A program made the translations under genes and the position numbers. DNA of 63,944 nt, the filler included, from Octopus bimaculoides (Eukaryota): NCBI RefSeq assembly GCF_001194135.2. It is 6 parts of 6 records of this genome, joined end to end, with 100 filler letters (N's around TTAATTAATTAA, not from the genome) between each part and the next. Parts side by side here need not be neighbours in the genome. Positions count along the whole stretch, not along the records: positions 5,341 to 32,797 come from NC_069004.1; 5 more parts are not named here. One strand, written 5' to 3'. Of this stretch, positions 5,450-32,148 are shown in pieces (the stretch's first letter is position 1; the number at the start of each line of letters is the position of its first letter). A model generated the notes under the pieces. The model was not told the origin of the DNA, ran no database searches, and worked only from the letters and a program-made list of their open reading frames with translations.

Positions 5450-5750
5450 ATCATCACCATCGTTTAACGTCCGCTTTCCATGCTAGCATGGGTTGGACTA
5501 TTTGACTGAGGACTGACGAACCAGATGGCTGCACCATGTTCGAATCTGATCTGGCAAAGTTTCTACAGCTGGATACCCTTCCTAATGCCAACCACTCCGA
5601 GAGTGTAGTGGGTGCTTTTACGTGCCACCAGCATGAGGGCCAGTCAGGTAGTATTGGCAATGGCCACGCTCAAATGGTGTTTTTTATGTGCCACCTCCAC
5701 AGGAGCCAAGTCCAGCGCCATTGGTAATGACCTCGCTCGAATGTTTTTTC
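5450..5750 (-). mobile_element. RTE LINE 3' UTR copy
   Basis: Contains CATCGTTTAACGTCCGCTTTCCATGCTAGCATGGGTTGGAC...CCCTTCCTAATGCCAACCACT. Confidence 0.8.
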
Positions 5751-7830: not shown

Positions 7831-8346
7831 CTGAAGCAAAGAAGACATCATCTTACAACTCATATTTTGGTAATTCCAATAAGGTAAAATTCATAACATA
7901 TGGCTCCCAGTAATTTTCATAGCTCTGATCCTGTCCCCAACACTGTGCATCTCTGCCACACTGCCCACACTTCATGTTACCTGTGCTGCCACCTATAGCC
8001 ACCACCTCCTTTCTAAAGTGATATTTACCATTGACAATGCTACCACTCATGTTCCTCACTCACAGCATTCACCTCTACCTCTATCCAGGGACAGATTAAA
8101 ACCTAGAGGGGCCCTAAGCACTTAAAAGGTTTTGGTGCTCCCACCCCCATATATATATATANNNNNNNNNNNNNNNNNNNNNNNNNNNNNNNNNNNNNNN
8201 NNNNNNNNNNNNNNNNNNNNNNNNNNNNNNNNNNNNNNNNNNNNNNNNNNNNNNNNNNNNNNNNNNNNNNNNNNNNNNNNNNNNNNNNNNNNNNNNNNNN
8301 NNNNNNNNNNNNNNNNNNNNNNNNNNNNNNNNNNNNNNNNTATATA

Positions 8347-8495
8347 TCATCATCGTTTAACGTCCGCTTTCCATGCTAGCATGGGTTGGACGATTTGACT
8401 GAGGACTGGTGAAACCGGATGGCAACACCAGGCTCCAATCTAATTTGGCAGAGTTTCTACAGCTGGATGCCCTTCCTAACACCAACCACTCAGAG
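8347..8495 (-). mobile_element. RTE LINE 3' UTR copy (truncated)
   Basis: Same CATCATCGTTTAACGTCCGC...GGATGCCCTTCCTAAC motif. Confidence 0.8.
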
Positions 8496-8654
8496 AGTAT
8501 ATATATATATATATATACATGCATGTAAAAAAATAATATACATACATACAGGTGCAATGGGTAAATTGTTAACATTTCATAATTTTAATTTCACATGTGC
8601 ACACTGTTTTTCATTTTGTAGACTACATACTATAGTAGGGTCAGTTGGGCACTG

Positions 8655-8985
8655 TCTGTGACCTCTGCCTGTGGCACGTAAAAAGAACCTTTCGAGTATT
8701 GGGCTTCACAGAGGCAATGACAAATGGTCAAGACCTTTGGCAATATGTTGTGCGAAGGAAGATGCATCAGACCAAGTGTAATCGTAGTCGTGGAAGATTC
8801 TGGTGTCATGCAACTGGCACCTGTGTCAGTGACATGAAAAGTACCCATTACATTCTCAGAGTGATTGGCATTAGGAAGGGCATCCAGCCATAGAAACCAT
8901 GCCAAAATAAACTGGAGTCTGGTGTAGCCCTGGTCAAACCGTCCAAGCTATGCCAGCATGGACAACAGATGTTAAATGATGCTGA
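8655..8985 (+). mobile_element. RTE LINE ORF end plus 3' UTR
   Basis: Reads RVLGFTEAMTNGQDLWQYVV, followed by GGCATTAGGAAGGGCATCCAGC...GATGTTAAATGATG. Confidence 0.75.
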
Positions 8986-9093
8986 TGATATACATACACA
9001 CACACACAAAGAAGCAAACTTCTTAAAACTCCTCAGTTATGCCTGTGATTACAATATGACAAGGACATCATAAATATAGAAGCAAAGACTTAC

Positions 9094-9152
9094 TGATTCT
9101 CAGATAAACTGCTCTTTCTGGACTGAAAACAAGTTGTTTGGATTTTATTTTG
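9094..9152 (-). CDS. BRCC3: BRCC3/BRCC36 exon
   Basis: Boundaries ctatttcag|CAA and CA|gtaagt; 59 nt, phase 0-2. Encodes QNKIQTTCFQSRKSSLSEN(Q), containing the BRCC36 TCFQS motif. Phases fit both neighbouring exons. Confidence 0.9.
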
Positions 9153-10094
9153 CTGAAATAGAAGGAAAAAATAATAAAATTTCCCACTGGGTCAAATAGA
9201 AAAAAGAACCCCTACCCATCAGGTTCCCCAGGTAGCAGAGAGAAAAACAGCCTTGAGATATAGAGGTTCATGGTAAATATATTTCACTTGTACCTTGACT
9301 TCACATCTCTCTCTCCAGATGGAGGAAGCCATATATTCTTCACGCACCTGTTTCTGTCATCCCTCCATCATACTTTCATATACTTCAATATCATACCTCA
9401 CTCAGTTGAGGGGTTTTGTCTTGCACCCTCAAGACTCGGTGAGTTCACCAGTGCTGGTGCCATGAAAAAAAAGCACCCAGTACAGTCTGTGAAGTGGTTG
9501 GCATTAGGAACGGCATCCAGCTGTAGAAACCATGTCAAAGCAAACACTGGAGCTTGATACAGCCATTTGGCTCATCAGTTCATGTAGATTTATCCTACCT
9601 ATGCCAGCCTGACAAAAGGGACATTAAAGCACGTAGAAAACTCAGATATACAAAACAACTATTTTTTTCGAGGAGTGACAGGACATTCACCTCTGTTAGG
9701 AGGTGGTCACCACCTTCCTCACCTTAATTAATATACTTTCTTCCTAACTTCTGAATTCTGTGTCCTTGTCACTAATTATAAATGTTCAAGTACATTGACC
9801 CTAGATAAGGTACTTCTTTCCCCTCTCTCATTACTACAATTCTTTAACTGGTACATCTCTCTCTCTCTCTCCTTTCAATTCAAGGTATAAAATTTATCTT
9901 GTGTGTATTTTTAGAAATACAGTAGTACCTCGGTTTTTGAACAACTCTTATCACGAATATATCGTGCTTTAAATAACTATATATATATATATATATATAT
10001 ACACACAGATAATTAGCGTTGCAGCCTGGCCACAATCCAGTTAACAAAACTAGCAAAAATATAAAATAAAAATCGAAAACTTTGCAAATCTTAC

Positions 10095-10183
10095 CTTTGA
10101 GTTTTTGTCTTCATTAAAAACGGAAAAGATGAGCCCAATGAAGCCTGGTTCCATCATTTGGTACATGGCCTGAGTTTGGACGT
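10095..10183 (-). CDS. BRCC3: BRCC3/BRCC36 exon (JAMM Asp and following segment)
   Basis: Boundaries tattcccaag|AC and AAG|gtaaga; 89 nt, phase 1-0. Encodes (D)VQTQAMYQMMEPGFIGLIFSVFNEDKNSK. Confidence 0.95.
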
Positions 10184-10349
10184 CTTGGGAATAAAAGAAA
10201 ATGTAGAAGATGCAAAATACAGTTGCTGCTTCACCAATACTATTCTACAGCTCAGCTCTGCCAGTCATCTCCTACTTTCCCCCACATCTCTCTCTGTCTC
10301 CACTCAATCACTCCCACCCTCTCTTCTAAAATATGAGCAGTCATGTACG

Positions 10350-10900
10350 GTTGTGAGTTCAATTCATGGTGGTGCGTTGTGTCCTTGAGCAAGACACTTT
10401 ACTTCACATTGCTCCAATTCCGTTCAACTGGCAAAAATGAGGTGTGCCTGCATTTCAAAAGGCCACCCTTGTCACATACTGTGTCATCCTGAATCTCCCT
10501 GAGAACTACACGTTAAGCATATGCATGTCTGCGGAGTACTCAGCCACTTGCATGTTAATTTCATGAGCAGGCAGTTCCATTGATCAGATCAACTGGAACG
10601 CTTCTTGCCATGACCAATAGAATGCCAGTTTATATGTGTATATATTCCTGGTGATGTGTTGTGTCTCTTGAGCAAGACACTTTATTTCCGTTCACTCAGC
10701 TGTCAAAAATGAGTAGTACCTGTAATTCAAAGGGGCCTGCCTTGTCACATTCTGTGTCACGCTGAATCTCCCTGAGGACTACACATTAAAGGTATGCATG
10801 TCTGTCGAGTACTCGGCAACTTGCAGGTTAATCTCACGAGCAAATTGTTCCGTTGATCAGATCAATTGGAACCGTTGTTGCCATAACCGATGGAGTGCCA
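10350..10900 (+). mobile_element. Two tandem copies of a tRNA-derived SINE
   Basis: GTTGTGAGTTCAATTC...GTCCTTGAGCAAGACACTTTA...CTGAATCTCCCTGAGAACTAC...TTCCGTTGATCAGATCAACTGGAAC occurs twice here. Related copies lie at 36170 and 58795. Confidence 0.75.
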
Positions 10901-11532
10901 CTATAGTTGCACAATCAAATATGCGGTTTTCCAGGTGTTTGGAACTGAGAATGGGAGCCATCTTGAAGAAGAAACAGTTGCACTGAAGCACCAGTTGAAG
11001 CAGCCCATTGAAGAATACAACAATATGGAACAAATTAGACCCTGATATACAAAAAGATGGGATGGTCATGACTGGTATGTCTTTGGTCCTATTCATATTC
11101 AATCAGGAGTAACTCAGGACTAAACAGCAACATCAGCCAATGAGGGAGCCTCTACATAGTAAATTTGCCACAAAACAACAACCAAGTCTTCCTCAAATCA
11201 TGCCCTACCGTCATCATTTTAACATTGACTTCTCCATGTTTGTAGGGGTCAAATGGAAATTGTTGTGGTGGGTTTTTTTTACAGCTGGATGCCCTTCCAG
11301 TCACCTAACCTTACATATTTCCAAGTAAGATAATATTTTCCTCTAACCAGATAAGTTTTCCACAGAAGACTGGAAATGAACAATCCTTGCTTGCCTGACC
11401 ATGCAATTTAAACCCTAAAACTACCCTCAAATAAATGACACAACCCCGCCATTTTAAAGTGATCTTAATTAAAACTGTCTCTCAAAATTTCCAGCACCAT
11501 CTTGACAATAATTAAGTTAATTTAATAAATTA

Positions 11533-11950
11533 TCATCATCATCATTATTTAGGTGTCCACTTTCCATGCTGGCATGGGTTAGATAGTTTGACTGGAACTA
11601 GTAAGCTGGACACCTGTACCAGATTCCAGGCTGATTTGGCATGGTTTCTATGGTTGGATGCCCTCCCTAATGCCAACCATTTCAAGAGTGTAGGGTTAGG
11701 GTTAGGGTTAGGGTTAGGGTTAGGGTTAGAAAGATATTGATGTTCGTGGAGCCGCAAAGCGTGCAGCACCGTCGGCCTAGCGCACTGTATTCGGGCGGAC
11801 GCAGGCTGGGTGAAAACATGTCAGTGGCACGGGTACCCTCCTTACGTGTCACTGGCATGGGTGCCCCCTTACGTGTCACCAGCACAAGTGCCTTTCACAC
11901 ATCACCAATCTTCTCAAGTAAGGCAAATCGCCAAAGGTCTATTAACTGAA
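11533..11950 (-). mobile_element. RTE LINE 3' UTR copy interrupted by a telomeric insertion
   Basis: CATCATTATTTAGGTGTCCACTTTCCATGCTGGCATGGG...CCCTAATGCCAACCATTTCAAGAGTGTAG, then the insertion, then TTACGTGTCACTGGCA-type repeats resume near 11816. Confidence 0.8.
11691..11729 (+). repeat. Interstitial telomeric repeat: host TAG plus (GGTTAG)6
   Basis: Read directly: TAG GGTTAG x6. TTAGGG is the common metazoan telomere repeat. Confidence 0.95.
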
Positions 11951-12194
11951 AGGCAGTGTATTTCAATAGAAATATGGTAACAAAAGGGTCAAAGTGAACT
12001 AAATTAAAACTTTCCATCAAAATTTCATGTTAATCTATGTTCCAAACAGAAACTTGATAATGACAAAGTTACTTTACTAAATTCTTCCTTATTTTCAAAA
12101 TTAATTGAAACAAAGGCAATGTATTTTAGTGGAAACATGATAAAAAGAAGGTTAAATTTGTTAATGTAAAAAGCCATAATTAAAGAAAGCTTAC

Positions 12195-12282
12195 CAACAT
12201 GAGATGGCCAAACTGTGATGTGTGGGTGTGAATGGTACCAACCAAGTACCCTGAGGGGTTGTTTAAGTTCTATGGCTAATTC
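12195..12282 (-). CDS. BRCC3: BRCC3/BRCC36 exon with the JAMM HxH motif
   Basis: Boundaries attttacag|GAA and G|gtaagc; 88 nt, phase 0-1. Encodes ELAIELKQPLRVLGWYHSHPHITVWPSHV, containing the canonical GWYHSHPHITVWPSHVD. Confidence 0.96.
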
Positions 12283-12403
12283 CTGTAAAATAAAATTTAG
12301 TGAGATTAAAAATTTTGAAGTGAAAATAATAATTCCTTTCTGCTATAGGCCCAAGGCCTGAAATTTTGGGGAGGAAACAAGTCAATTACATTGACCCCAG
12401 TGC

Positions 12404-12800
12404 TCAACTTTCTCTTTTACCTTTTACTCTTTTACTTGTTTCAGTCATTTGACTGCAGCCATGCTGGAGCACTACCTTCAAGGGTTTTTGTTGAACAATC
12501 TGATCCCAGGACTTAATTTTTTTTAAGCCTGGTACTAATTCTATCGATCTCTTTTGCCGAAATGCTACGTTAACAGGAATGTAAACACACCAACACCAGT
12601 TGTCAATCAATGATGGATGGACAAACATAAACACACAAATATATATATATATATATATATATACATGATGGGCTTCTTTCAGTTTCCATCTACCAAATCC
12701 ACTCATAAGGCTTTGGTCAGCCTGAGGCTATAGTAGAAGACACTTGCCCAAGGTGCCATGCAGTGGGACTGAACCCAGTACCATGTGGTTGGGAAACAAG
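12404..12800 (-). mobile_element. tRNA-derived SINE (full-length type, as at 34829-35240)
   Basis: Reverse complement of GGTTCAGTCCCACTGCATGGCACCTTGGGCAAGTGTCTTCTACTATAG...CAGCATGGCTGCAGTCAAATGACTGAAACAAGTAAAAGAG. Confidence 0.85.
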
Positions 12801-12850
12801 CTTTTTACCACACAGCCCAAAAAAAAAACAAAAAAAAGGGGTGAACAAAC

Positions 12851-12929
12851 CTCTGCCTTAATAGATGCAGCTGACAGTTGTTCAGGGGAAATTTCAACAC
12901 GATCAGCTTGTTTGTCAGATCTTCTCAGC
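12851..12929 (-). CDS. BRCC3: BRCC3/BRCC36 exon, 5' part lost in an N gap
   Basis: Encodes LRRSDKQADRVEISPEQLSAASIKAE and ends GAG|gtttgt. Matches BRCC36 LRRSDKRKDRVEISPEQLSAAS.EAE. Confidence 0.93.
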
Positions 12930-13289
12930 NNNNNNNNNNNNNNNNNNNNNNNNNNNNNNNNNNNNNNNNNNNNNNNNNNNNNNNNNNNNNNNNNNNNNNN
13001 NNNNNNNNNNNNNNNNNNNNNNNNNNNNNNNNNNNNNNNNNNNNNNNNNNNNNNNNNNNNNNNNNNNNNNNNNNNNNNNNNNNNNNNNNNNNNNNNNNNN
13101 NNNNNNATCATAATTCATGAAGGAAGGAAGGGAGTGAAACCTAAGATTTGGAGAAATACCCTTCACTGAAAAAAATATTACATTTTCCATCACAGCACAC
13201 TAATAGAGACAGATTTTTAAAATTTTCTTTGTTTTTTGTTGTTGTTTTATTTTGTCTTTTTTTTTTTCTTTTTTTGTCAACTTTGACAG

Positions 13290-13740
13290 AAAAAAACAAA
13301 CAAACATGAGTTCTCTACATTTAGTAGCCTCCCATAGTAGCACTTCCACACCACTTTCTTTGCAGGGTCACAAACTGCAAGTGAACCATCATCCATGCGA
13401 ACACACTTCTCTCCAACATCACAATTTTTTCTGGCACAAGCCGCTCGTCCTCATGCTTCAGATCATTGGCAAACTTCTTCCTTTCTGCTTCACCCCTGGC
13501 TGAGTATACCTGCTTCCCTTCTGGATGCCAGATATAGCTCCTTGCTACTGCCACCCTTCCAGTCCTTCCAAGCTGTTTCTTTGCTCTAATGGCCATGTTA
13601 ACTACATTGTTCCACCACCATGTCCATCTAAGTCTGGTTGGGACTTTGCACCACCCACAAATTTGGTCTGAGACTCTCACTAAGTTGTCTCGTAAGAACC
13701 TCCAGTTATCTTCTATGTTGCAAGTCTGTGACTCCTCCAC
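13290..13740 (-). mobile_element. Decayed RTE LINE ORF fragment
   Basis: Reads NWRFLRDNLVRVSDQICGWCKVPTRLRWTWWWNNVV and, in another frame, MDDGSLAVCDPAKKVVWKC. Confidence 0.8.
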
Positions 13741-14343
13741 CTTTTCAGACAGATAGAGACAGACAGACAGATACAAAGTCACTTTAATGTCCACATTTCC
13801 TTGCTTGCTACATCAGGTTATATAGCGTTTCCATTAGAATTTCACCCTAACACTACCATCACCACCAATAACAGAAATCAATTCTATTGATTTCTTTTTC
13901 CCCTCCATGTACTCAACCGTACTCAAATAATTGACATTGTATTGAACTGAAAAAAATAAATATTTATCCAAAACAGTTAATTTTTCAACATTGACTTAGG
14001 GAGTAAAACCCTAGAGACGCCCTCAGCACAAAAATATAATAGTTAAGCTACTGCCTTTATATTTAATGAAGAAAATTAAATGTAATAATACTTATGTGGT
14101 GGGGATGGGAGAGACCAAAACACTGGTGCCCTCCCTACTCAAACAACTAATTACATATCGTAATTTAACTGAATTATTTTAAACTTGGTTTTAACAGCAA
14201 AACTAAGGGGTAGAGCTAAAATGGTAATCCTTTGGTATTGGTCTACAGAGTGTCGGTGTGAGGAGACGACATCATTCACTTTTTCATCCTTGCCTTTTTA
14301 TGTCATGAGGGAAGGTTGAATGTGGGTGAATAACAGGTGAATC

Positions 14344-15241: not shown

Positions 15242-16080
15242 AAAAAAAACGGTGGGTACTACATAGAAACGACATGCTGGGTTCCCCCTAATGTCTCCCC
15301 AATAAAGTGTTGTTTTCTTGTTTATAATATCTATTACATAACGATAATTAAGTTAGTTTAATTAGTCTTAGTAACTACAGGCACCGTCAGAGACTCGTAA
15401 ATTATTACATACACTACATATCTGTGGAATCCCAGAAATGTCTATAAAAATTCCAAGGTGCGTTGCTTTATGTCTGTAGAAAATCCATCATAAAACGGCA
15501 ATTAACTCAGTTTAATTATAATTAAGGTTTGTAGTCACTTATATTACGATGATTTAATCATTAAATGGGTGAATGCAACGTCGTTTCTTTGTGGTCCTTT
15601 CTGCCTCATTAAAGGCCGTTGTTTACGTACAAATTCAACAATTTTCTCCATCTTTCTATGGAGCGTCCGACTAAATGTCTTTTATCTGGTAGGTCCCTTT
15701 ACGTTCTGAGTTCGAATTTCACCAAGGTTAACTTTGTTTATCATCGTTATGAGGTCAATATATTAAAGTGGCAGTCAAACAACTGACTTATAGCCCGTTT
15801 CTCTCTTAAAATGTGGCATTCAGCCAACGTGAGCGATTAATATTTCGAAAATGTTGTATATAGATAGCTAGATAGAGTACATAAACATACATACATACGT
15901 ACAATTATACACAATATGACATACATCATACACACTATATATACATGAACACACACACAATATATATATATATATATATANNNNNNNNNNNNNNNNNNNN
16001 NNNNNNNNNNNNNNNNNNNNNNNNNNNNNNNNNNNNNNNNNNNNNNNNNNNNNNNNNNNNNNNNNNNNNNNNNNNNNNNN

Positions 16081-16127
<47 letters not shown>

Positions 16128-16329: not shown

Positions 16330-16740
16330 TAACCCTTATGAGATTTTTAATAGCCTATGGGCTAATCCAAAAGCGTACGTTGCTTTGGTCAGAATGTCCG
16401 ATGGGTTGAGATCCCAGAACACAGGACCTGGAGCCAGTTCTGCTTCTCCTCAGTTCAAAGATTTGAGCAAAGTCGACTCCAACATCGGGACCAACTTCGT
16501 GCAAGCATGAAGGCCCACTGGCGAAACGCTGCTCCTCTAAATGGAAACCTTACGTGTCCTTGTGGTTTTGTAGCACGAAGCAAAACAGGCCTTTACGTCC
16601 ACTCAAGAAAACACATAGTAAATGATCCCCAAGCATTCGAGCAAATTGAGTCCTCAACTTGTTCCGTTTGCCAAGAGGTTTGCAAGCCACCAGCAGGCCT
16701 CAAGAGACACATTCGTGTCCATAGAATATGATTACTGCCT
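16330..16740 (+). mobile_element. RTE LINE 3' end with C-terminal zinc-finger-like motifs
   Basis: Reads EHRTWSQFCFSSVQRFEQSRLQHRDQLRASMK...CPCGFVARSKTGLYVHSRKH...CSVCQEVCKPPAGLKRHIRVH. Confidence 0.7.
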
Positions 16741-17206: not shown

Positions 17207-18763
17207 ATGTTGCAACTTACCAATCATGTAATGAAAACACAACCTCGTGAAATAACACCCGACGATCTACCAAATAAGGAAGACCACGATAGAAAATACG
17301 GCCGAATAAAAACTGAAAACCATATTTATTCGGCTACTATTGCAGGTAAAGGACCTGCGAAACATTTGGTTAACGATGTAATGTCCATAGCGATACCGGA
17401 AAATCCCGGATCGTTCCCTGAGCAAGGCCACTTGGTATATGTACCGTGCATTCGATGCACTCTCTTCTATCATTGTAAGTCTGAAACCACGAGCAACGCA
17501 AACGTTTTTAAGTGTGGAAATCATATATACATCAACCACTGGGTGTTTTTCCGTTGTTCCCAATGTCCAAATGGCTCCAATTCGCTTGACTGTTATAATA
17601 CCTACCAAATGACAATTCCATGTCCTCTTCCTTACTTGCTAAGAATTTCAAACTTTTATATAGAGCACAACAAAATCTGCACCGGTGGATCAAGATGTTC
17701 TCATTTATTAGCAAACCCGAATGACTATCAATGCTGTAACGATGTCGCTTTTAGTAAGACGAGCATTGAAAAATCTTTGTATCCTAAAACAATAAAAACT
17801 ACACTGGAAACCCTCCCAGCCGTCGATCTGCCGACGAAAATTCATCACAGTTCTCATGACTGTGCTATAGATGGATGCATTGATTATCAAATTTTAATGG
17901 AGACTTTAAACAATGTATCGTGTCAGCTTACTGGCGACATGTGGGTCGGGTCTTTCACAAGGATTTTCAAGGCGGTTAACCTCCACAACAAGGAAGCTTT
18001 GTGCATTAAAGCCGTATGTCTGCATCATTACAAAAACACTGTTTGTCATTCGGTCGATACGGAATTGACGCTTTTCAAACAAATGAACGATAAAGACAAA
18101 ACCAATGAAGATGTTTTATCTCTGTTAGGGGCATTTCGTTTGGAAGACACTGTATATACGGTGTCGTATCTACAGGAGAACGGTTCTTTGATGGAGTACT
18201 TAACACGAGTTGGCTACCTCAGCGAGTTTGAATATATATCAATGGTGGAGGAAATATGTTGCGGAATATCATTTCTTCATTCTCGCAATATTGCCCACAG
18301 AAACCTGACTTTAGAGAATATATTGGTTGGTAAAAATGGTAAATTAAAAATAGCTGGTTTCGGCTCCTCTTGCTTTGTCGCACCCGATAGATATATGAAT
18401 TATCCGTTTGTTACATATACATACGCTGCTCCAGAACTGTTCCAAACACGAAGTTTCGATCCTCTAAAACCGGACATTTGGGCTCTGGGCATCATATCTT
18501 ATTACTTATTTAAACGTGAACATTTATTTCCCGATTCGTGTATTCGTTCTCAAAGTTATTGGCCTCTGAAACAATGGAACCATACAGAACTCAGTCGGAA
18601 TTTTATCGAACATTTGTTAAACCGTGATTTTATTCAACGCCCTAATATAAGCAGTGTGTTGACACATAGCTGGTTCAGTCTTGCCCTCTATGAGATTTAT
18701 TCTGTCAAAAAAAAATACACAAATTCCTTCGAGGGTGGAAAAAAAATTATTGTAAAAAATTAA
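17207..18763 (+). CDS. Intronless TSSK-like Ser/Thr pseudokinase with a Cys/His-rich N-terminal extension (518 aa)
   Basis: Uninterrupted ORF. Kinase subdomains: LCIK (II), DTEL (III), FLHSRNIAHRNLTLEN (VIb), LKIAGFG (VII), YAAPE (VIII), FDPLKPDIWALGI (IX), RP (XI). Subdomains VIII-IX and the lack of introns resemble testis-specific serine kinases; that family call is inference. Confidence 0.88.
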   Translation: MLQLTNHVMKTQPREITPDDLPNKEDHDRKYGRIKTENHIYSATIAGKGPAKHLVNDVMSIAIPENPGSFPEQGHLVYVPCIRCTLFYHCKSETTSNANVFKCGNHIYINHWVFFRCSQCPNGSNSLDCYNTYQMTIPCPLPYLLRISNFYIEHNKICTGGSRCSHLLANPNDYQCCNDVAFSKTSIEKSLYPKTIKTTLETLPAVDLPTKIHHSSHDCAIDGCIDYQILMETLNNVSCQLTGDMWVGSFTRIFKAVNLHNKEALCIKAVCLHHYKNTVCHSVDTELTLFKQMNDKDKTNEDVLSLLGAFRLEDTVYTVSYLQENGSLMEYLTRVGYLSEFEYISMVEEICCGISFLHSRNIAHRNLTLENILVGKNGKLKIAGFGSSCFVAPDRYMNYPFVTYTYAAPELFQTRSFDPLKPDIWALGIISYYLFKREHLFPDSCIRSQSYWPLKQWNHTELSRNFIEHLLNRDFIQRPNISSVLTHSWFSLALYEIYSVKKKYTNSFEGGKKIIVKN

Positions 18764-20530: not shown

Positions 20531-21598
20531 GTGGCTTATACTCCGCGTTGGAGGGTTAAAGGCAAGGAAGGAAGGTTTCATATACAAATGGTCTGCAACA
20601 ACAAAGAATACATAAAAATGAAACCATTTGTTACAAATTGCGATTCACCCACTTATCTTGTATTTTTTTTTTCGAAACTTTTGGGCAACAGAACCCCCAC
20701 CCCAAATCTTGGCTCTCCTCCTGAGCATGGACGTTTAGGACAAACTTATGGAAGTGCTTTGGACATATCATCCTGGTGTCCATGCATCATATACAGGGTG
20801 GTCGCTAGAAGACCGGAAAGTTTGAAGGCAGAACTAACAATCGTTAATTAGATCAGAGCTGGCAGAAACGCCGTCATACCTATTTCGTTATTGCCCACAA
20901 GGGGCTAAACATAGAGGGAACAAACAAGAACAGACGAACGGATTAAGTCGATTACATCGACCNNNNNNNNNNNNNNNNNNNNNNNNNNNNNNNNNNNNNN
21001 NNNNNNNNNNNNNNNNNNNNNNNNNNNNNNNNNNNNNNNNNNNNNNNNNNNNNNNNNNNNNNNNNNNNNNNNNNNNNNNNNNNNNNNNNNNNNNNNNNNN
21101 NNNNNNNNNNNNNNNNNNNNNNNNNNNNNNNNNNNNNNNNNNNNNNNNNNNNNNNNNNNNNNNNNNNNNNNNNNNNNNNNNNNNNNNNNNNNNNNNNNNN
21201 NNNNNNNNNNNNNNNNNNNNNNNNNNNNNNNNNNNNNNNNNNNNNNNNNNNNNNNNNNNNNNNNNNNNNNNNNNNNNNNNNNNNNNNNNNNNNNNNNNNN
21301 NNNNNNNNNNNNNNNNNNNNNNNNNNNNNNNNNNNNNNNNNNNNNNNNNNNNNNNNNNNNNNNNNNNNNNNNNNNNNNNNNNNNNNNNNNNNNNNNNNNN
21401 NNNNNNNNNNNNNNNNNNNNNNNNNNNNNNNNNNNNNNNNNNNNNNNNNNNNNNNNNNNNNNNNNNNNNNNNNNNNNNNNNNNNNNNNNNNNNNNNNNNN
21501 NNNNNNNNNNNNNNNNNNNNNNNNNNNNNNNNNNNNNNNNNNNNNNNNNNNNNNNNNNNNNNNNNNNNNNNNNNNNNNNNNNNNNNNNNNNNNNNNNN

Positions 21599-22442: not shown

Positions 22443-23010
22443 ATAATCCTTTCTTTCTACTAAAGGCATAAAGCCTGAAATTTGCGGGGATGGGATTAGT
22501 CGATTACATCGATCCCAGTACTTGNNNNNNNNNNNNNNNNNNNNNNNNNNNNNNNNNNNNNNNNNNNNNNNNNNNNNNNNNNNNNNNNNNNNNNNNNNNN
22601 NNNNNNNNNNNNNNNNNNNNNNNNNNNNNNNNNNNNNNNNNNNNNNNNNNNNNNNNNNNNNNNNNNNNNNNNNNNNNNNNNNNNNNNNNNNNNNNNNNNN
22701 NNNNNNNNNNNNNNNNNNNNNNNNNNNNNNNNNNNNNNNNNNNNNNNNNNNNNNNNNNNNNNNNNNNNNNNNNNNNNNNNNNNNNNNNNNNNNNNNNNNN
22801 NNNNNNNNNNNNNNNNNNNNNNNNNNNNNNNNNNNNAGAATACACTTGCCCAAGGTGCCACGCAGTGGGACAGAACCCGGAAGCTTCTTACCACACAGCT
22901 ATATCTGTTACGATAAATGTCTGTGCGCTTAGCACTGCACGTTTATACGAGGACCTCTCAAGGCGAATACCGCAGTATTCGGCGTTCTAACATGACATCC
23001 ATGCTTTTTA

Positions 23011-23740: not shown

Positions 23741-24858
23741 TGTAATAAAGATACTAATGATTTCAAACTTTAACACAAGGCCAGCAGTTTCGGGGTAAGA
23801 GAGCAAAAGTCGATTGCATCAACCCCAGTTTTCAACTGGTACTTATGTTATTAACCCCGAAATGATAAAAGGCAAAAATCGACGACCTCGGTGGAATTCG
23901 AACCCAGGACATACAGAACCAGAAGAGATATTGTCAAGCATTTAGTCTCGACTCTCCAATCAATCCTTCATTACACCCACAGAATGGTAATTTTATGCTC
24001 AAACATCTACCAAGTCGCTTTGATGTGAGAACTGAGTGAGTGTATGGAAGATCAATTGACAAGCAATGACTCGTGTCTAATGGCTGCCAAGCGCTTGTTT
24101 CTCGCAGAATCCATATTGTCAGGTGGATGTGTTGGATTGGATTGAGTTCTTGGTTTTTAGTCGTGGAATGTTTTTTAAAAAAATTGTGATTACAGAACAT
24201 GTCGAGGACGGAGTGAAAGAAGATTTGTTTTTCACCCAAAATATATAGAGAGAAATGAAGCAGTTATTGATCACTGGATCCAAAATAGTGGTNNNNNNNN
24301 NNNNNNNNNNNNNNNNNNNNNNNNNNNNNNNNNNNNNNNNNNNNNNNNNNNNNNNNNNNNNNNNNNNNNNNNNNNNNNNNNNNNNNNNNNNNNNNNNNNN
24401 NNNNNNNNNNNNNNNNNNNNNNNNNNNNNNNNNNNNNNNNNNNNNNNNNNNNNNNNNNNNNNNNNNNNNNNNNNNNNNNNNNNNNNNNNNNNNNNNNNNN
24501 NNNNNNNNNNNNNNNNNNNNNNNNNNNNNNNNNNNNNNNNNNNNNNNNNNNNNNNNNNNNNNNNNNNNNNNNNNNNNNNNNNNNNNNNNNNNNNNNNNNN
24601 NNNNNNNNNNNNNNNNNNNNAATATCATGGTTTGATGCTCATGATACTCGCGCATGTCCATATATATATAAATACGATATATAACATTTATCAAAAGCGC
24701 TGAACATACGTTTGTTTGTCTTTGTAGTTCATATTCATCTATATGCAACTGGCCACTCTGAGTTTTTTTTTTTTTCTCTCATTTTCGTTTAATCTATGCA
24801 AATTACTGGGCCATAAATATATTCTATTACGTTTTGTGTATATATCTGTTTCGTTTTT

Positions 24859-26403: not shown

Positions 26404-26463
<60 letters not shown>

Positions 26464-27130
26464 NNNNNNNNNNNNNNNNNNNNNNNNNNNNNNNNNNNNN
26501 NNNNNNNNNNNNNNNNNNNNNNNNNNNNNNNNNNNNNNNNNNNNNNNNNNNNNNNNNNNNNNNNNNNNNNNNNNNNNNNNNNNNNNNNNNNNNNNNNNNN
26601 NNNNNNNNNNNNNNNNNNNNNNNNNNNNNNNNNNNNNNNNNNNNNNNNNNNNNNNNNNNNNNNNNNNNNNNNNNNNNNNNNNNNNNNNNNNNNNNNNNNN
26701 NNNNNNNNNNNNNNNNNNNNNNNNNNNNNNNNNNNNNNNNNNNNNNNNNNNNNNNNNNNNNNNNNNNNNNNNNNNNNNNNNNNNNNNNNNNNNNNNNNNN
26801 NNNNNNNNNNNNNNNNNNNNNNNNNNNNNNNNNNNNNNNNNNNNNNNNNNNNNNNNNNNNNNNNNNNNNNNNNNNNNNNNNNNNNNNNNNNNNNNNNNNN
26901 NNNNNNNNNNNNNNNNNNNNNNNNNNNNNNNNNNNNNNNNNNNNNNNNNNNNNNNNNNNNNNNNNNNNNNNNNNNNNNNNNNNNNNAAAGCAATCAAAGA
27001 CAAAAAAAAACAAGTGTCCAAATGACGTTCACAGTTAATAATATGTTGACTTTCAAAGAAGGAAACATTGTTACAGAGTAAACTTTACAGAGTAGATCTA
27101 TAACGTTTCGGACATGGCCCGTCGTATATA

Positions 27131-29345: not shown

Positions 29346-29838
29346 ATATNNNNNNNNNNNNNNNNNNNNNNNNNNNNNNNNNNNNNNNNNNNNNNNNNNN
29401 NNNNNNNNNNNNNNNNNNNNNNNNNNNNNNNNNNNNNNNNNNNNNNNNNNNNNNNNNNNNNNNNNNNNNNNNNNNNNNNNNNNNNNNNNNNNNNNNNNNN
29501 NNNNNNNNNNNNNNNNNNNNNNNNNNNNNNNNNNNNNNNNNNNNNNNNNNNNNNNNNNNNNNNNNNNNNNNNNNNNNNNNNNNNNNNNNNNNNNNNNNNN
29601 NNNNNNNNNNNNNNNNNNNNNNNNNNNNNNNNNNNNNNNNNNNNNNNNNNNNNNNNNNNNNNNNNNNNNNNNNNNNNNNNNNNNNNNNNNNNNNNNNNNN
29701 NNNNNNNNNNNNNNNNNNNNNNNNNNNNNNNNNNNNNNNNNNNGACGGCGATGGGGAGGAAGCGACACCCGTCAGATGATGTGACGCCGAATCGTGTGCT
29801 CTTTAGAAAACATAAACTGTATACTGACTAGAATTCTA

Positions 29839-30375: not shown

Positions 30376-31500
30376 TACACACACTCCATCTATTTATCTA
30401 TACACGCAAACACACACACATACACTCACGCATGACAACATACGTAATGCCAGCTTGCACATTCGAACAGATTTCAAATTCTTCTCTGGAGGATGCTCGA
30501 AGCTGGAACATATTCTTTTCTNNNNNNNNNNNNNNNNNNNNNNNNNNNNNNNNNNNNNNNNNNNNNNNNNNNNNNNNNNNNNNNNNNNNNNNNNNNNNNN
30601 NNNNNNNNNNNNNNNNNNNNNNNNNNNNNNNNNNNNNNNNNNNNNNNNNNNNNNNNNNNNNNNNNNNNNNNNNNNNNNNNNNNNNNNNNNNNNNNNNNNN
30701 NNNNNNNNNNNNNNNNNNNNNNNNNNNNNNNNNNNNNNNNNNNNNNNNNNNNNNNNNNNNNNNNNNNNNNNNNNNNNNNNNNNNNNNNNNNNNNNNNNNN
30801 NNNNNNNNNNNNNNNNNNNNNNNNNNNNNNNNNNNNNNNNNNNNNNNNNNNNNNNNNNNNNNNNNNNNNNNNNNNNNNNNNNNNNNNNNNNNNNNNNNNN
30901 NNNNNNNNNNNNNNNNNNNNNNNNNNNNNNNNNNNNNNNNNNNNNNNNNNNNNNNNNNNNNNNNNNNNNNNNNNNNNNNNNNNNNNNNNNNNNNNNNNNN
31001 NNNNNNNNNNNNNNNNNNNNNNNNNNNNNNNNNNNNNNNNNNNNNNNNNNNNNNNNNNNNNNNNNNNNNNNNNNNNNNNNNNNNNNNNNNNNNNNNNNNN
31101 NNNNNNNNNNNNNNNNNNNNNNNNNNNNNNNNNNNNNNNNNNNNNNNNNNNNNNNNNNNNNNNNNNNNNNNNNNNNNNNNNNNNNNNNNNNNNNNNNNNN
31201 NNNNNNNNNNNNNNNNNNNNNNNNNNNNNNNNNNNNNNNNNNNNNNNNNNNNNNNNNNNNNNNNNNNNNNNNNNNNNNNNNNNNNNNNNNNNNNNNNNNN
31301 NNNNNNNNNNNNNNNNNNNNNNNNNNNNNNNNNNNNNNNNNNNNNNNNNNNNNNNNNNNNNNNNNNNNNNNNNNNNNNNNNNNNNNNNNNNNNNNNNNNN
31401 NNNNNNNNNNNNNNNNNNNNNNNNNNNNNNNNNNNNNNNNNNNNNNNNNNNNNNGTGGAATGGGGGTACTATTGAACAGGGATAGAAGCTGTGCAAAAGC

Positions 31501-31553
<53 letters not shown>

Positions 31554-32085: not shown

Positions 32086-32148
<63 letters not shown>

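What the first reader, a model, noticed from the sequence alone, without database searches (positions are those of the whole stretch)
11685..11820. Candidate telomerase footprint: (GGTTAG)6 added on a host TAG, then an 86-nt GC-rich orphan that could be telomerase-RNA read-through
Seen: the host LINE UTR consensus reads ...GAGTGTAG|TGGGTGCTTTTACG. In this copy, GAGTGTAG is followed by exactly six GGTTAG units (11694-11729) and then AAAGATATTGATGTTCGTGGAGCCGC...GGCTGGGTGAAA (11730-~11815) before LINE repeats resume. About 10 host nt are missing. The orphan is GC/CpG-rich, unlike its surroundings, and I saw it nowhere else in the window. Established: vertebrate-type telomerase primes on short telomere-like 3' ends and ends each round at GGTTAG. 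Template-boundary bypass copies the U-rich linker 5' of the template, giving A-rich DNA right after GGTTAG. Telomerase-RNA-derived insertions beside interstitial telomeric repeats are known in rodents. Inference: the minus strand, ...ACAUCAAUAUCUUU-CUAACC, looks like a linker plus template, so a healed break may have captured the 5' leader of this animal's telomerase RNA. The orphan lies 3' of the G-strand, which is not normal subtelomere orientation. Caveats: 86 nt is a long pre-template leader, and the 5' end of a telomere-targeting retroelement is an alternative source.
Basis: partly seen in the sequence, partly recalled or inferred. Interest (0 to 1): 0.75.

Follow-up and report, generated by a model that had tools for sequence, protein, structure and literature searches.

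The report
Telomere-repeat repair scar, octopus intron
A perfect (GGTTAG)6 run plus a 77-base CpG-rich foreign segment sits cleanly inside an old dispersed repeat in an intron of the Octopus bimaculoides BRCC3 gene, which is the known footprint of a chromosome break patched by telomerase; whether the foreign segment copies the octopus telomerase RNA could not be tested here.

Summary
(GGTTAG)6 is exact at 11694-11729 and is the only telomeric run in the piece. It follows a host TAG that is in register with the repeats, and a 77-nt GC/CpG-rich segment (11730-11806) found nowhere else in the window comes next. One detail needs correcting. Host sequence most likely resumes at TGGGTG (11807), so little or no host DNA is missing. 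Only AAAA in place of CTTTT (11813-11816) remains unexplained.

The window is Octopus bimaculoides chromosome CM046624.1, about 6.3 Mb from the chromosome end. The insertion lies in a 2-kb intron of BRCC3/BRCC36. Joining the flanks restores the continuity of a 71-80%-diverged dispersed repeat.

This pattern matches the short interstitial telomeric sequences that telomerase inserts at double-strand breaks in vertebrates. The geometry fits that claim, but I could not test it. The putative leader is long and has no hairpin next to the template, which counts mildly against the claim.

Verdict: a real, young, telomerase-type repair scar, and a cheap lead to the octopus telomerase RNA (about 0.3).

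The parts
11532..11693 (+). Left arm of the host dispersed repeat (an old copy, 71-80% identical to five other copies in the piece). It ends ...CAAGAGTGTAG.
   Evidence: All three consensus CpGs in this arm have decayed to TG/CA, and the arm's CpG o/e is 0.
11691..11693 (+). Host TAG in register with the added repeats. This is the inferred 3' end of the break that primed telomerase.
   Evidence: The host consensus GTAG is present in copy 5605-5608. TRF extends the array to 11691.
11694..11729 (+). Interstitial telomeric sequence: (GGTTAG)6, 36/36 perfect, with the G-strand on the + strand.
11730..11806 (+). The 77-nt 'orphan'. It is GC 59% with 9 CpG, unique in the window, and its source is unknown. 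Its reverse complement would read 5'-GCCUGCG...AUAUCUUU-3' directly upstream of CUAACC.
   Evidence: No Rfam, peptide, prokaryote, metagenome, viral, plasmid or literature match was found.
11807..11816 (+). Right junction zone. TGGGTG (11807-11812) equals the host consensus directly after GTAG. AAAA (11813-11816) replaces the host CTTTT and is unexplained.
11817..11945 (+). Right arm of the host repeat, including its 27-28-nt tandem units (11819-11892). The far end is approximate.
12196..12285 (-). BRCC3/BRCC36 exon (..ELAIELKQPLRVLGWYHSHPHITVWPSHV) upstream of the intron that holds the insertion.
   Evidence: annotated gene with JAB and BRCC36_C domains spanning the site; tblastn.
10095..10184 (-). 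The next BRCC3/BRCC36 exon (DVQTQAMYQMMEPGFIGLIFSVFNEDKNSK). The intron is about 10185-12195.

Best explanation
This is the scar of a germ-line double-strand break in a BRCC3 intron of Octopus bimaculoides, repaired with the help of telomerase.

Shown: the host repeat is interrupted between ...GTAG and TGGGTG... by 113 nt, made of six perfect GGTTAG units plus a 77-nt foreign, CpG-rich segment. There is no target-site duplication and essentially no loss of host sequence. The insert is much younger than the repeat copy that carries it.

Inferred: the 3' end ...TAG paired with the CUA of the telomerase RNA template, and telomerase added six repeats, stopping in the GGTTAG phase. The nascent strand was then extended by a further 77 nt copied from an RNA. 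That RNA was either telomerase's own, read past the template boundary, or a second RNA reached by template switching or capture. The new strand was then joined to the other break end at TGGGTG by end joining.

The insertion has no evident function. It is a neutral intronic scar. The source of the 77 nt is unresolved; my estimate is about 0.3 for the telomerase RNA 5' leader and about 0.4 for some other GC-rich RNA or DNA.
For: The repeats are exact and unique in the piece. Joined flanks restore continuity with four other copies of the repeat. There is 3-nt in-register microhomology at the break, as in mammalian telomerase-inserted ITSs (PMC2246262). The break site GAGTGTAG|TGGGTG is G/T-rich. 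The orphan is absent from the five other repeat copies and from the rest of the window. Its composition is an extreme outlier for this locus, so it is not random local DNA. The left arm of the host copy has lost all its consensus CpGs while the insert keeps 9, and the repeats are 36/36 perfect, so the insertion is young. One-step insertion of telomeric repeats plus adjacent retrotranscribed sequence is documented at 41 vertebrate loci (PMC8537989). The locus is interstitial, at about 29.87 Mb of a 36.17-Mb chromosome, so this is not a subtelomere.
Against: No orthologous empty site could be obtained, so 'insertion' rests on the repeat consensus alone. The sequence comes from a single assembly and no read-level confirmation was possible. 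AAAA in place of CTTTT at 11813-11816 is not explained by a simple join. Telomerase involvement is inferred from the pattern, not observed. Capture of a pre-existing telomeric DNA fragment would give a similar picture.
Confidence: 0.7

Rival explanations
1. The reader's reading, which is a sub-hypothesis of the best explanation. The orphan is a cDNA of the 5' leader of the octopus telomerase RNA. After the last repeat, TERT ran through the template boundary to the 5' end of its own RNA. That would make this a 'type B TERC-ITS', the first outside vertebrates, and a sequence tag for the still unknown cephalopod TR.
For: The orientation and the seamless GGTTAG|AAAG junction are exactly those of the four type B loci (two in simian primates, one in fugu, one in a shark) in PMC8537989. 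The RNA-sense strand reads as a GC-rich leader, then an AU/U-rich linker (..AUCAAUAUCUUU), then CUAACC, which resembles the human TR layout (my own knowledge of hTR). The 77-nt length falls within the 25-98 bp range of TERC-like fragments. The GC/CpG-rich, apparently low-copy composition suits a conserved ncRNA gene. The orphan is not part of any predicted protein or any known Rfam family.
Against: No homology test was possible. Known mollusc TRs place the template near nt 33, with the P1.1 boundary hairpin abutting it, and a single inserted A shifts the boundary (PMC8480181). Here the leader would be >=77 nt, and the nearest predicted hairpin ends 15 nt upstream of the template. The fold is no better than shuffled sequence (z -1.45 and -0.88). 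The geometry does not discriminate, because any filler added after telomerase extension lies 3' of the G-strand. Telomerase products usually end in the GGTTAG phase anyway. Type B loci are rare: 4 loci in 30 vertebrate genomes.
Confidence: 0.3
2. Telomerase added the repeats, but the 77 nt is an unrelated templated filler. It would be a fragment of another GC-rich nuclear RNA or DNA, such as a 5' UTR or CpG-island transcript, an rDNA spacer or expansion segment, or an unannotated ncRNA, captured between the extended end and the other break end during end joining.
For: Sequence additions accompany about 17% of rodent and 16% of primate ITS insertions, and most of the rodent additions are not TERC-derived (Table 1 of PMC2246262). 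Captured filler would sit in the same position. The composition points to a special, CpG-rich source class rather than bulk genome. No TR-like structural signal was found.
Against: No source was found. The orphan is not in any annotated or predicted CDS in 5.8 billion protein clusters and matches no Rfam family, including the rRNA cores and snRNAs. The additions exemplified in those papers are short (7 and 17 nt), and 77 nt is long by comparison. The junction has no extra nucleotides, which is simplest if one polymerase continued on one template.
Confidence: 0.4
3. The 113 nt is a fragment of a telomere end carrying a telomere-attached or telomere-targeting retroelement. This could be the 3' end of an endonuclease-deficient Penelope-like element primed on the G-overhang, or the 5' end of a SART-like LINE. 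Alternatively it is a copy of another ITS-containing locus, captured as DNA or as an endonuclease-independent cDNA at the break.
For: Such elements give a G-strand followed by non-telomeric sequence, which is the otherwise 'wrong' orientation seen here (PMC8557442). Octopus genomes carry Penelope-like elements of the Naiad group.
Against: EN-deficient PLEs carry a hammerhead ribozyme next to their reverse-complement telomeric repeats. No hammerhead or other Rfam family matched at E<=10 on either strand, and the orphan contains neither CUGANGA nor GAAA. No RT or other element ORF adjoins it. Peptides from all six frames, including the ATG-initiated frame, match nothing. In the paper read, the EN-deficient clades (Athena, Coprina) are not reported for cephalopods, although that paper does not survey their host range.
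Confidence: 0.12
4. This is not a real insertion event at this locus. Either it is an assembly chimera in the Illumina-based, gap-rich assembly, or it is a feature inherited from a repeat subfamily or segmental duplication that already carried it.
For: There is a single assembly with many N gaps in the piece. Read-level checks were not available. Only six copies of the repeat could be inspected.
Against: Both junctions fall at consecutive positions of the repeat consensus, which a chimera would not be expected to reproduce. The site lies in an N-free stretch running from 8341 to 12929. Five other copies lack the insert.
Confidence: 0.06

Closest known systems
Short interstitial telomeric sequences inserted by telomerase at double-strand breaks (Nergadze et al. 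2004/2007; PMC2246262)
   Same: The array is a few perfect hexamers (36 nt here; the primate mean is about 46 nt). It sits inside an otherwise continuous sequence, here a transposable-element copy. There is no target-site duplication, the break end is in register with the repeats, and extra sequence may be added.
   Different: The host is a cephalopod mollusc, whereas the described cases are vertebrates. The empty site is inferred from the repeat consensus, not from an orthologous locus. The added segment (77 nt) is longer than the 7- and 17-nt additions given as examples.
TERC-ITS, type B organisation (Sola et al. 2021; PMC8537989)
   Same: Telomeric repeats are followed, on the G-strand, by non-telomeric sequence inserted in the same event. 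The proposed mechanism is telomerase continuing beyond the template into the adjacent 5' part of its RNA.
   Different: Membership requires homology to the species' TERC, which could not be tested. The leader length and the lack of a hairpin next to the template differ from known mollusc TRs.
Endonuclease-deficient Penelope-like elements (Athena/Coprina) attached to telomeric G-overhangs
   Same: The G-strand repeats are followed by sequence copied from an RNA that carries reverse-complement telomeric repeats at its 3' end.
   Different: There is no hammerhead ribozyme motif, no RT ORF and no terminal location. Only 77 nt is present.
Templated sequence insertions, or filler DNA, at repaired breaks (RNA- or DNA-derived patches captured by end joining)
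   Same: A short foreign patch of tens to hundreds of nucleotides, without target-site duplication, at a break site.
   Different: Here the patch is fused seamlessly to telomerase-type repeats, and its donor is unknown.

Membership tests
Telomerase-inserted short ITS | A run of canonical telomeric hexamers at a non-terminal site | tested here: met
   (GGTTAG)6 is perfect. The locus is at about 29.87 of 36.17 Mb on CM046624.1. That TTAGGG is the cephalopod telomere motif rests on established knowledge and was not tested here.
Telomerase-inserted short ITS | The insertion interrupts an otherwise continuous ancestral sequence (empty site) | tested here: met
   This was consensus-based only. Joining 11693|11807 restores alignment through the joint to four other copies. 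The orthologous empty site was not obtainable.
Telomerase-inserted short ITS | [quoted passage not shown] | tested here: met
   Host TAG gives 3 nt in register. The chance expectation is <=1.56% (PMC2246262).
Telomerase-inserted short ITS | No target-site duplication or poly(A); end-joining-type junctions | tested here: met
   No duplication flanks 11694-11806. The right junction shows a small anomaly (AAAA for CTTTT).
TERC-ITS type B | The flanking segment is homologous to the species' telomerase RNA immediately 5' of the template | not testable with these tools
   No cephalopod TR appears in PMC8480181 or in the literature search. Rfam telomerase families gave no hit.
TERC-ITS type B | The segment lies downstream of the TTAGGG strand, in the orientation expected for read-through, with a seamless junction at the template end | tested here: met
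   GGTTAG|AAAGAT at 11729|11730, compared.
Mollusc telomerase RNA 5' region (Logeswaran et al. 2020) | A P1.1 hairpin immediately 5' of the template acts as boundary element, with a short leader (template about nt 33 in Pomacea) | tested here: not met
   The putative leader is >=77 nt. The nearest predicted hairpin ends 15 nt from the template, and the fold z-scores are -1.45 and -0.88. The prediction comes from a single sequence, so this is weak evidence.
EN-deficient Penelope-like element 3' end | A hammerhead ribozyme motif adjacent to reverse-complement telomeric repeats, plus an RT ORF | tested here: not met
   No Rfam hammerhead at E<=10. No peptide match in any frame.
Subtelomere-telomere junction fragment | Unique sequence lies 5' of the G-strand repeats | tested here: not met
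   The orphan lies 3' of the G-strand.
Host repeat subfamily sequence | The orphan is present in other copies of the repeat | tested here: inconclusive
   It is absent from the five other copies in the piece and from L002/L003. Genome-wide copies were not searchable.

The most novel reading that the evidence does not exclude
The 77-nt orphan is a reverse-transcribed copy of the 5' leader of the Octopus bimaculoides telomerase RNA. That would make this the first TERC-ITS, meaning telomerase read-through during break repair, found outside vertebrates. It would also be the first sequence handle on a cephalopod telomerase RNA, which homology searches that recovered 21 other mollusc TRs did not report.
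Probability: 0.28. Interest if true: 0.7.

Novelty: new member of a known kind. Interest (0 to 1): 0.4.

Why it matters
In itself this is a neutral intronic scar of a well-described kind, and it adds only an invertebrate example.

Its value is as a lead. If the orphan is the telomerase RNA leader, one BLAST of 77 nt against the octopus genome would locate the cephalopod telomerase RNA gene. That RNA is fast-evolving and hard to find, and the published survey of animal TRs contains no cephalopod member. A positive result would also show that RNA-templated break repair by telomerase read-through operates beyond vertebrates.

If the orphan maps elsewhere, the locus is simply an ITS with captured filler.

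Tried and rejected
1. Rfam at E<=10 on 11400-12100, and at gathering threshold on the whole piece. This gave only a spurious snoR79 hit on the ATC-rich start of the repeat, and no telomerase, hammerhead, rRNA or snRNA family.

2. Peptides from all six frames of the orphan, concatenated and searched against 5.8 billion protein clusters. Nothing scored at E<=10, so the orphan is not a fragment of any predicted CDS or TE ORF in that database.

3. Exact 23-mers from the orphan, and from the orphan/repeat junction, searched against prokaryotic genomes, JGI metagenomes and IMG/VR. There were no hits. blastn against plasmids found none either. Exact matching makes these weak negatives, useful only against contamination.

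4. Full-text search of papers for 20-mers from the orphan found none. A search for a cephalopod telomerase RNA in the literature found none.

5. A local template for the orphan in the window was not found, which rejects a nearby templated patch.

6. The orthologous empty-site test failed. Kinase homologues are only 48-52% identical (Argonauta and unnamed assemblies). L002 shares only the coding similarity. The O. sinensis BRCC36 hit is an intronless retrocopy inside a kinesin gene, not the orthologue. Other hits are non-octopus mollusc transcripts.

7. Independent contigs for the locus, sought via small window ORFs, were not on record.

I did not try to reach reads another way.

9. A subtelomere-junction origin was rejected on orientation. 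A mitochondrial origin was judged unlikely on composition only (59% GC, 9 CpG) and was not aligned.

10. ARAGORN found no tRNA-like head in the host repeat, so I could not classify the repeat as SINE or LINE.

Full report
WHAT IS THERE

The sequence reads ...CCAACCATTTCAAGAGTGTAG, then (GGTTAG)x6 at 11694-11729, then AAAGATATTGATGTTCGTGGAGCCGCAAAGCGTGCAGCACCGTCGGCCTAGCGCACTGTATTCGGGCGGACGCAGGC at 11730-11806, then TGGGTGAAAACATGTCAGTGGCAC.... Tandem Repeats Finder gives 11691-11729 as period 6, 6.5 copies, 100% matches. GGTTAGGGTTAG occurs five times, all within this array, against 0.09 expected from shuffles.

WHERE IT IS

The 518-aa kinase ORF at 17207-18763 is identical to a gene on chromosome CM046624.1 of assembly GCA_001194135.2. 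That accession is Octopus bimaculoides, which I know from the accession itself rather than from any tool. The match places the window at about 29.87 Mb of 36.17 Mb, so the site is interstitial.

The same look-up shows an annotated minus-strand gene with JAB and BRCC36_C domains spanning the site. tblastn places its exons at 12928-12851, 12285-12196, 10184-10095, 9155-9093 and 7832-7656. The insertion therefore lies in the roughly 2.0-kb intron between the exons ending ...HITVWPSHV and starting DVQTQAMYQ....

THE HOST REPEAT AND THE EMPTY SITE

The flanks belong to a dispersed repeat with five further copies in the piece, near 5572+, 6864-, 8466+, 8862- and 9495-. All the informative copies read ...GAG(A/T)GTA(G) TGGGT(G/A)CTTTT....

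I joined the two flanks in a script. When 11694-11806 is removed, local alignments to four copies run through the joint into TGGGTG and score higher (118->130, 150->156, 91->101, 79->88). When the join is made at 11817, the alignments stop at the junction.

So the insert is best defined as 113 nt, made of 36 nt of repeats plus a 77-nt orphan. Host loss is close to zero, not 'about 10 nt'. One oddity remains: AAAA at 11813-11816 where other copies have CTTTT.

There is no target-site duplication. I could not classify the repeat as SINE or LINE, and ARAGORN sees no tRNA-like part.

AGE

The host copy is 71-80% identical to its relatives. All three consensus CpGs in its left arm have decayed to TG or CA, giving a CpG o/e of 0. 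The insert has 36/36 perfect repeat bases and 9 CpGs in 77 nt (o/e 1.35). The insertion is therefore much younger than the repeat copy. This is an inference, because I have no dating.

THE ORPHAN

It is unique in the window; the best other match is an 11-mer. It is absent from the two other cephalopod loci I fetched.

It is a compositional outlier. No other 77-nt window in the piece has 9 CpG, and only 1 of 22,874 combines GC>=0.58 with >=7 CpG. Random genomic filler is therefore unlikely, and the donor is probably a CpG-rich, possibly constrained sequence.

Every search for the donor failed:
- No Rfam family on either strand at E<=10, which covers telomerase, hammerhead, rRNA and snRNA models, and none at gathering threshold across the piece.
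- No match for peptides from all six frames among 5.8 billion protein clusters.
- No exact 23-mers in prokaryotic genomes, metagenomes or viral contigs.
- No plasmid hit and no hit in paper texts.

MECHANISM

The pattern matches short interstitial telomeric sequences inserted by telomerase during double-strand-break repair in primates and rodents. Those are arrays of tens of nucleotides, inserted without target-site duplication, often inside transposable elements, with the break's 3' end in register with the repeats. Three or more in-register nucleotides occur in about 33% of such loci, against <=1.56% expected by chance (PMC2246262). Here TAG gives three. The break site GAGTGTAG|TGGGTG is also G/T-rich.

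I therefore hold, at about 0.7, that a break in this intron was extended by telomerase from ...TAG, received 77 further nucleotides, and was joined to the other end at TGGGTG.

IS THE ORPHAN TELOMERASE RNA?

It accounts for 4 of 41 loci, with fragments of 25-98 bp (PMC8537989). Geometry, seamless junction and length all fit. The RNA-sense strand has a GC-rich leader and an AU/U-rich linker before CUAACC.

Three points keep this from being evidence:
- Any filler attached after telomerase extension lies in the same position, and telomerase products usually end in the GGTTAG phase. Geometry therefore does not discriminate.
- Defining membership requires homology to the species' telomerase RNA. 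The published animal TR survey has 21 mollusc TRs, all gastropod or bivalve as far as its text and table show. No cephalopod TR turned up in the literature search. I could not search the octopus genome or RNA-seq.
- In mollusc TRs, the P1.1 boundary hairpin abuts the template, and the template lies near nt 33. Here the leader would be at least 77 nt, and the nearest predicted hairpin ends 15 nt upstream. The fold is no better than shuffles, with z of -1.45 and -0.88.

I put this reading at about 0.3.

RIVALS

- A non-TR templated filler, such as a 5' UTR or CpG-island transcript, an rDNA spacer, or an unknown ncRNA: about 0.4.
- A telomere-attached or telomere-targeting retroelement fragment, or a copy of another ITS locus: about 0.12. 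[quoted passage not shown]
- An assembly artefact or a repeat-subfamily feature: about 0.06. Both junctions fall at consecutive consensus positions, and five copies lack the insert, which weakens it.

WHAT FAILED

The best O. sinensis BRCC36 hit is an intronless retrocopy inside a kinesin gene. Kinase homologues are only 48-52% identical, and their locus shares only the coding similarity with the window. Small window ORFs near the site are not on record in any other assembly.

VERDICT

This is a real, young, telomerase-type repair scar. It is a new member of a known kind, and I know of no described invertebrate case, though I did not survey this systematically. The telomerase-RNA reading is a legitimate and cheap lead, since one genome BLAST would decide it, but it is unsupported so far.

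Noticed in passing
window 10185-12195 (- strand intron); exons 12285-12196 and 10184-10095: The break-repair scar lies inside an intron of BRCC3/BRCC36, which is itself a DNA-damage-response deubiquitinase gene. This is probably coincidence. On the gene's sense strand the insert places six CTAAC branch-point-like motifs about 390 nt downstream of the splice donor.
   Followed up: partly
window 11813-11816: AAAA replaces the CTTTT that every other copy of the host repeat has after TGGGTG. Neither a simple join nor point mutation explains it. It may be a repair-associated change.
   Followed up: partly
window 17207-18763 (+): An intronless 518-aa protein-kinase ORF (Pkinase, E 9e-40). Its only homologues in 5.8 billion clusters are 48-52% identical cephalopod sequences (Argonauta hians and two unnamed assemblies). 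It appears to be a lineage-restricted single-exon kinase with a long, cysteine-rich N-terminal half that has no Pfam match.
   Followed up: partly
L003 5001-5663 (Octopus sinensis CM016862.1, 80.04 Mb): O. sinensis carries an intronless 220-aa BRCC36 copy inside the span of a kinesin gene. It is a processed retrocopy with an intact reading frame, 88-96% identical to the O. bimaculoides exons.
   Followed up: partly
window 11819-11892: The tail of the host repeat contains 27-28-nt tandem units (GGGTRCCCYCCTTACGTGTCACYRGCAY, about 2.2 copies). Other copies show looser versions of these units.
   Followed up: no
window 16507-16731 (+) and 13321-13794 (-): There is a 74-aa ORF with a C2H2 zinc finger (E 3e-6) and a 157-aa ORF with no Pfam match. 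Both lie between BRCC3 and the kinase and are possibly decayed transposable-element coding fragments.
   Followed up: partly
window 8162-8340, 12930-13106, 15981-16080, 20963-21598, 22525-22836, 24293-24620, 26464-26986, 29350-29743, 30522-31454: There are nine N gaps of 100 to 930 nt in the 27-kb piece. One of them truncates a BRCC3 exon at 12929. The assembly is fragmentary here, which matters for any claim that rests on this single assembly.
   Followed up: no
window 16081-16122, 26406-26463, 31501-31550, 32086-32148: Perfect or near-perfect trinucleotide microsatellites, (TAA)14, (ATT)19, (AAT)17 and (AAT)21. Several of them abut assembly gaps.
   Followed up: no
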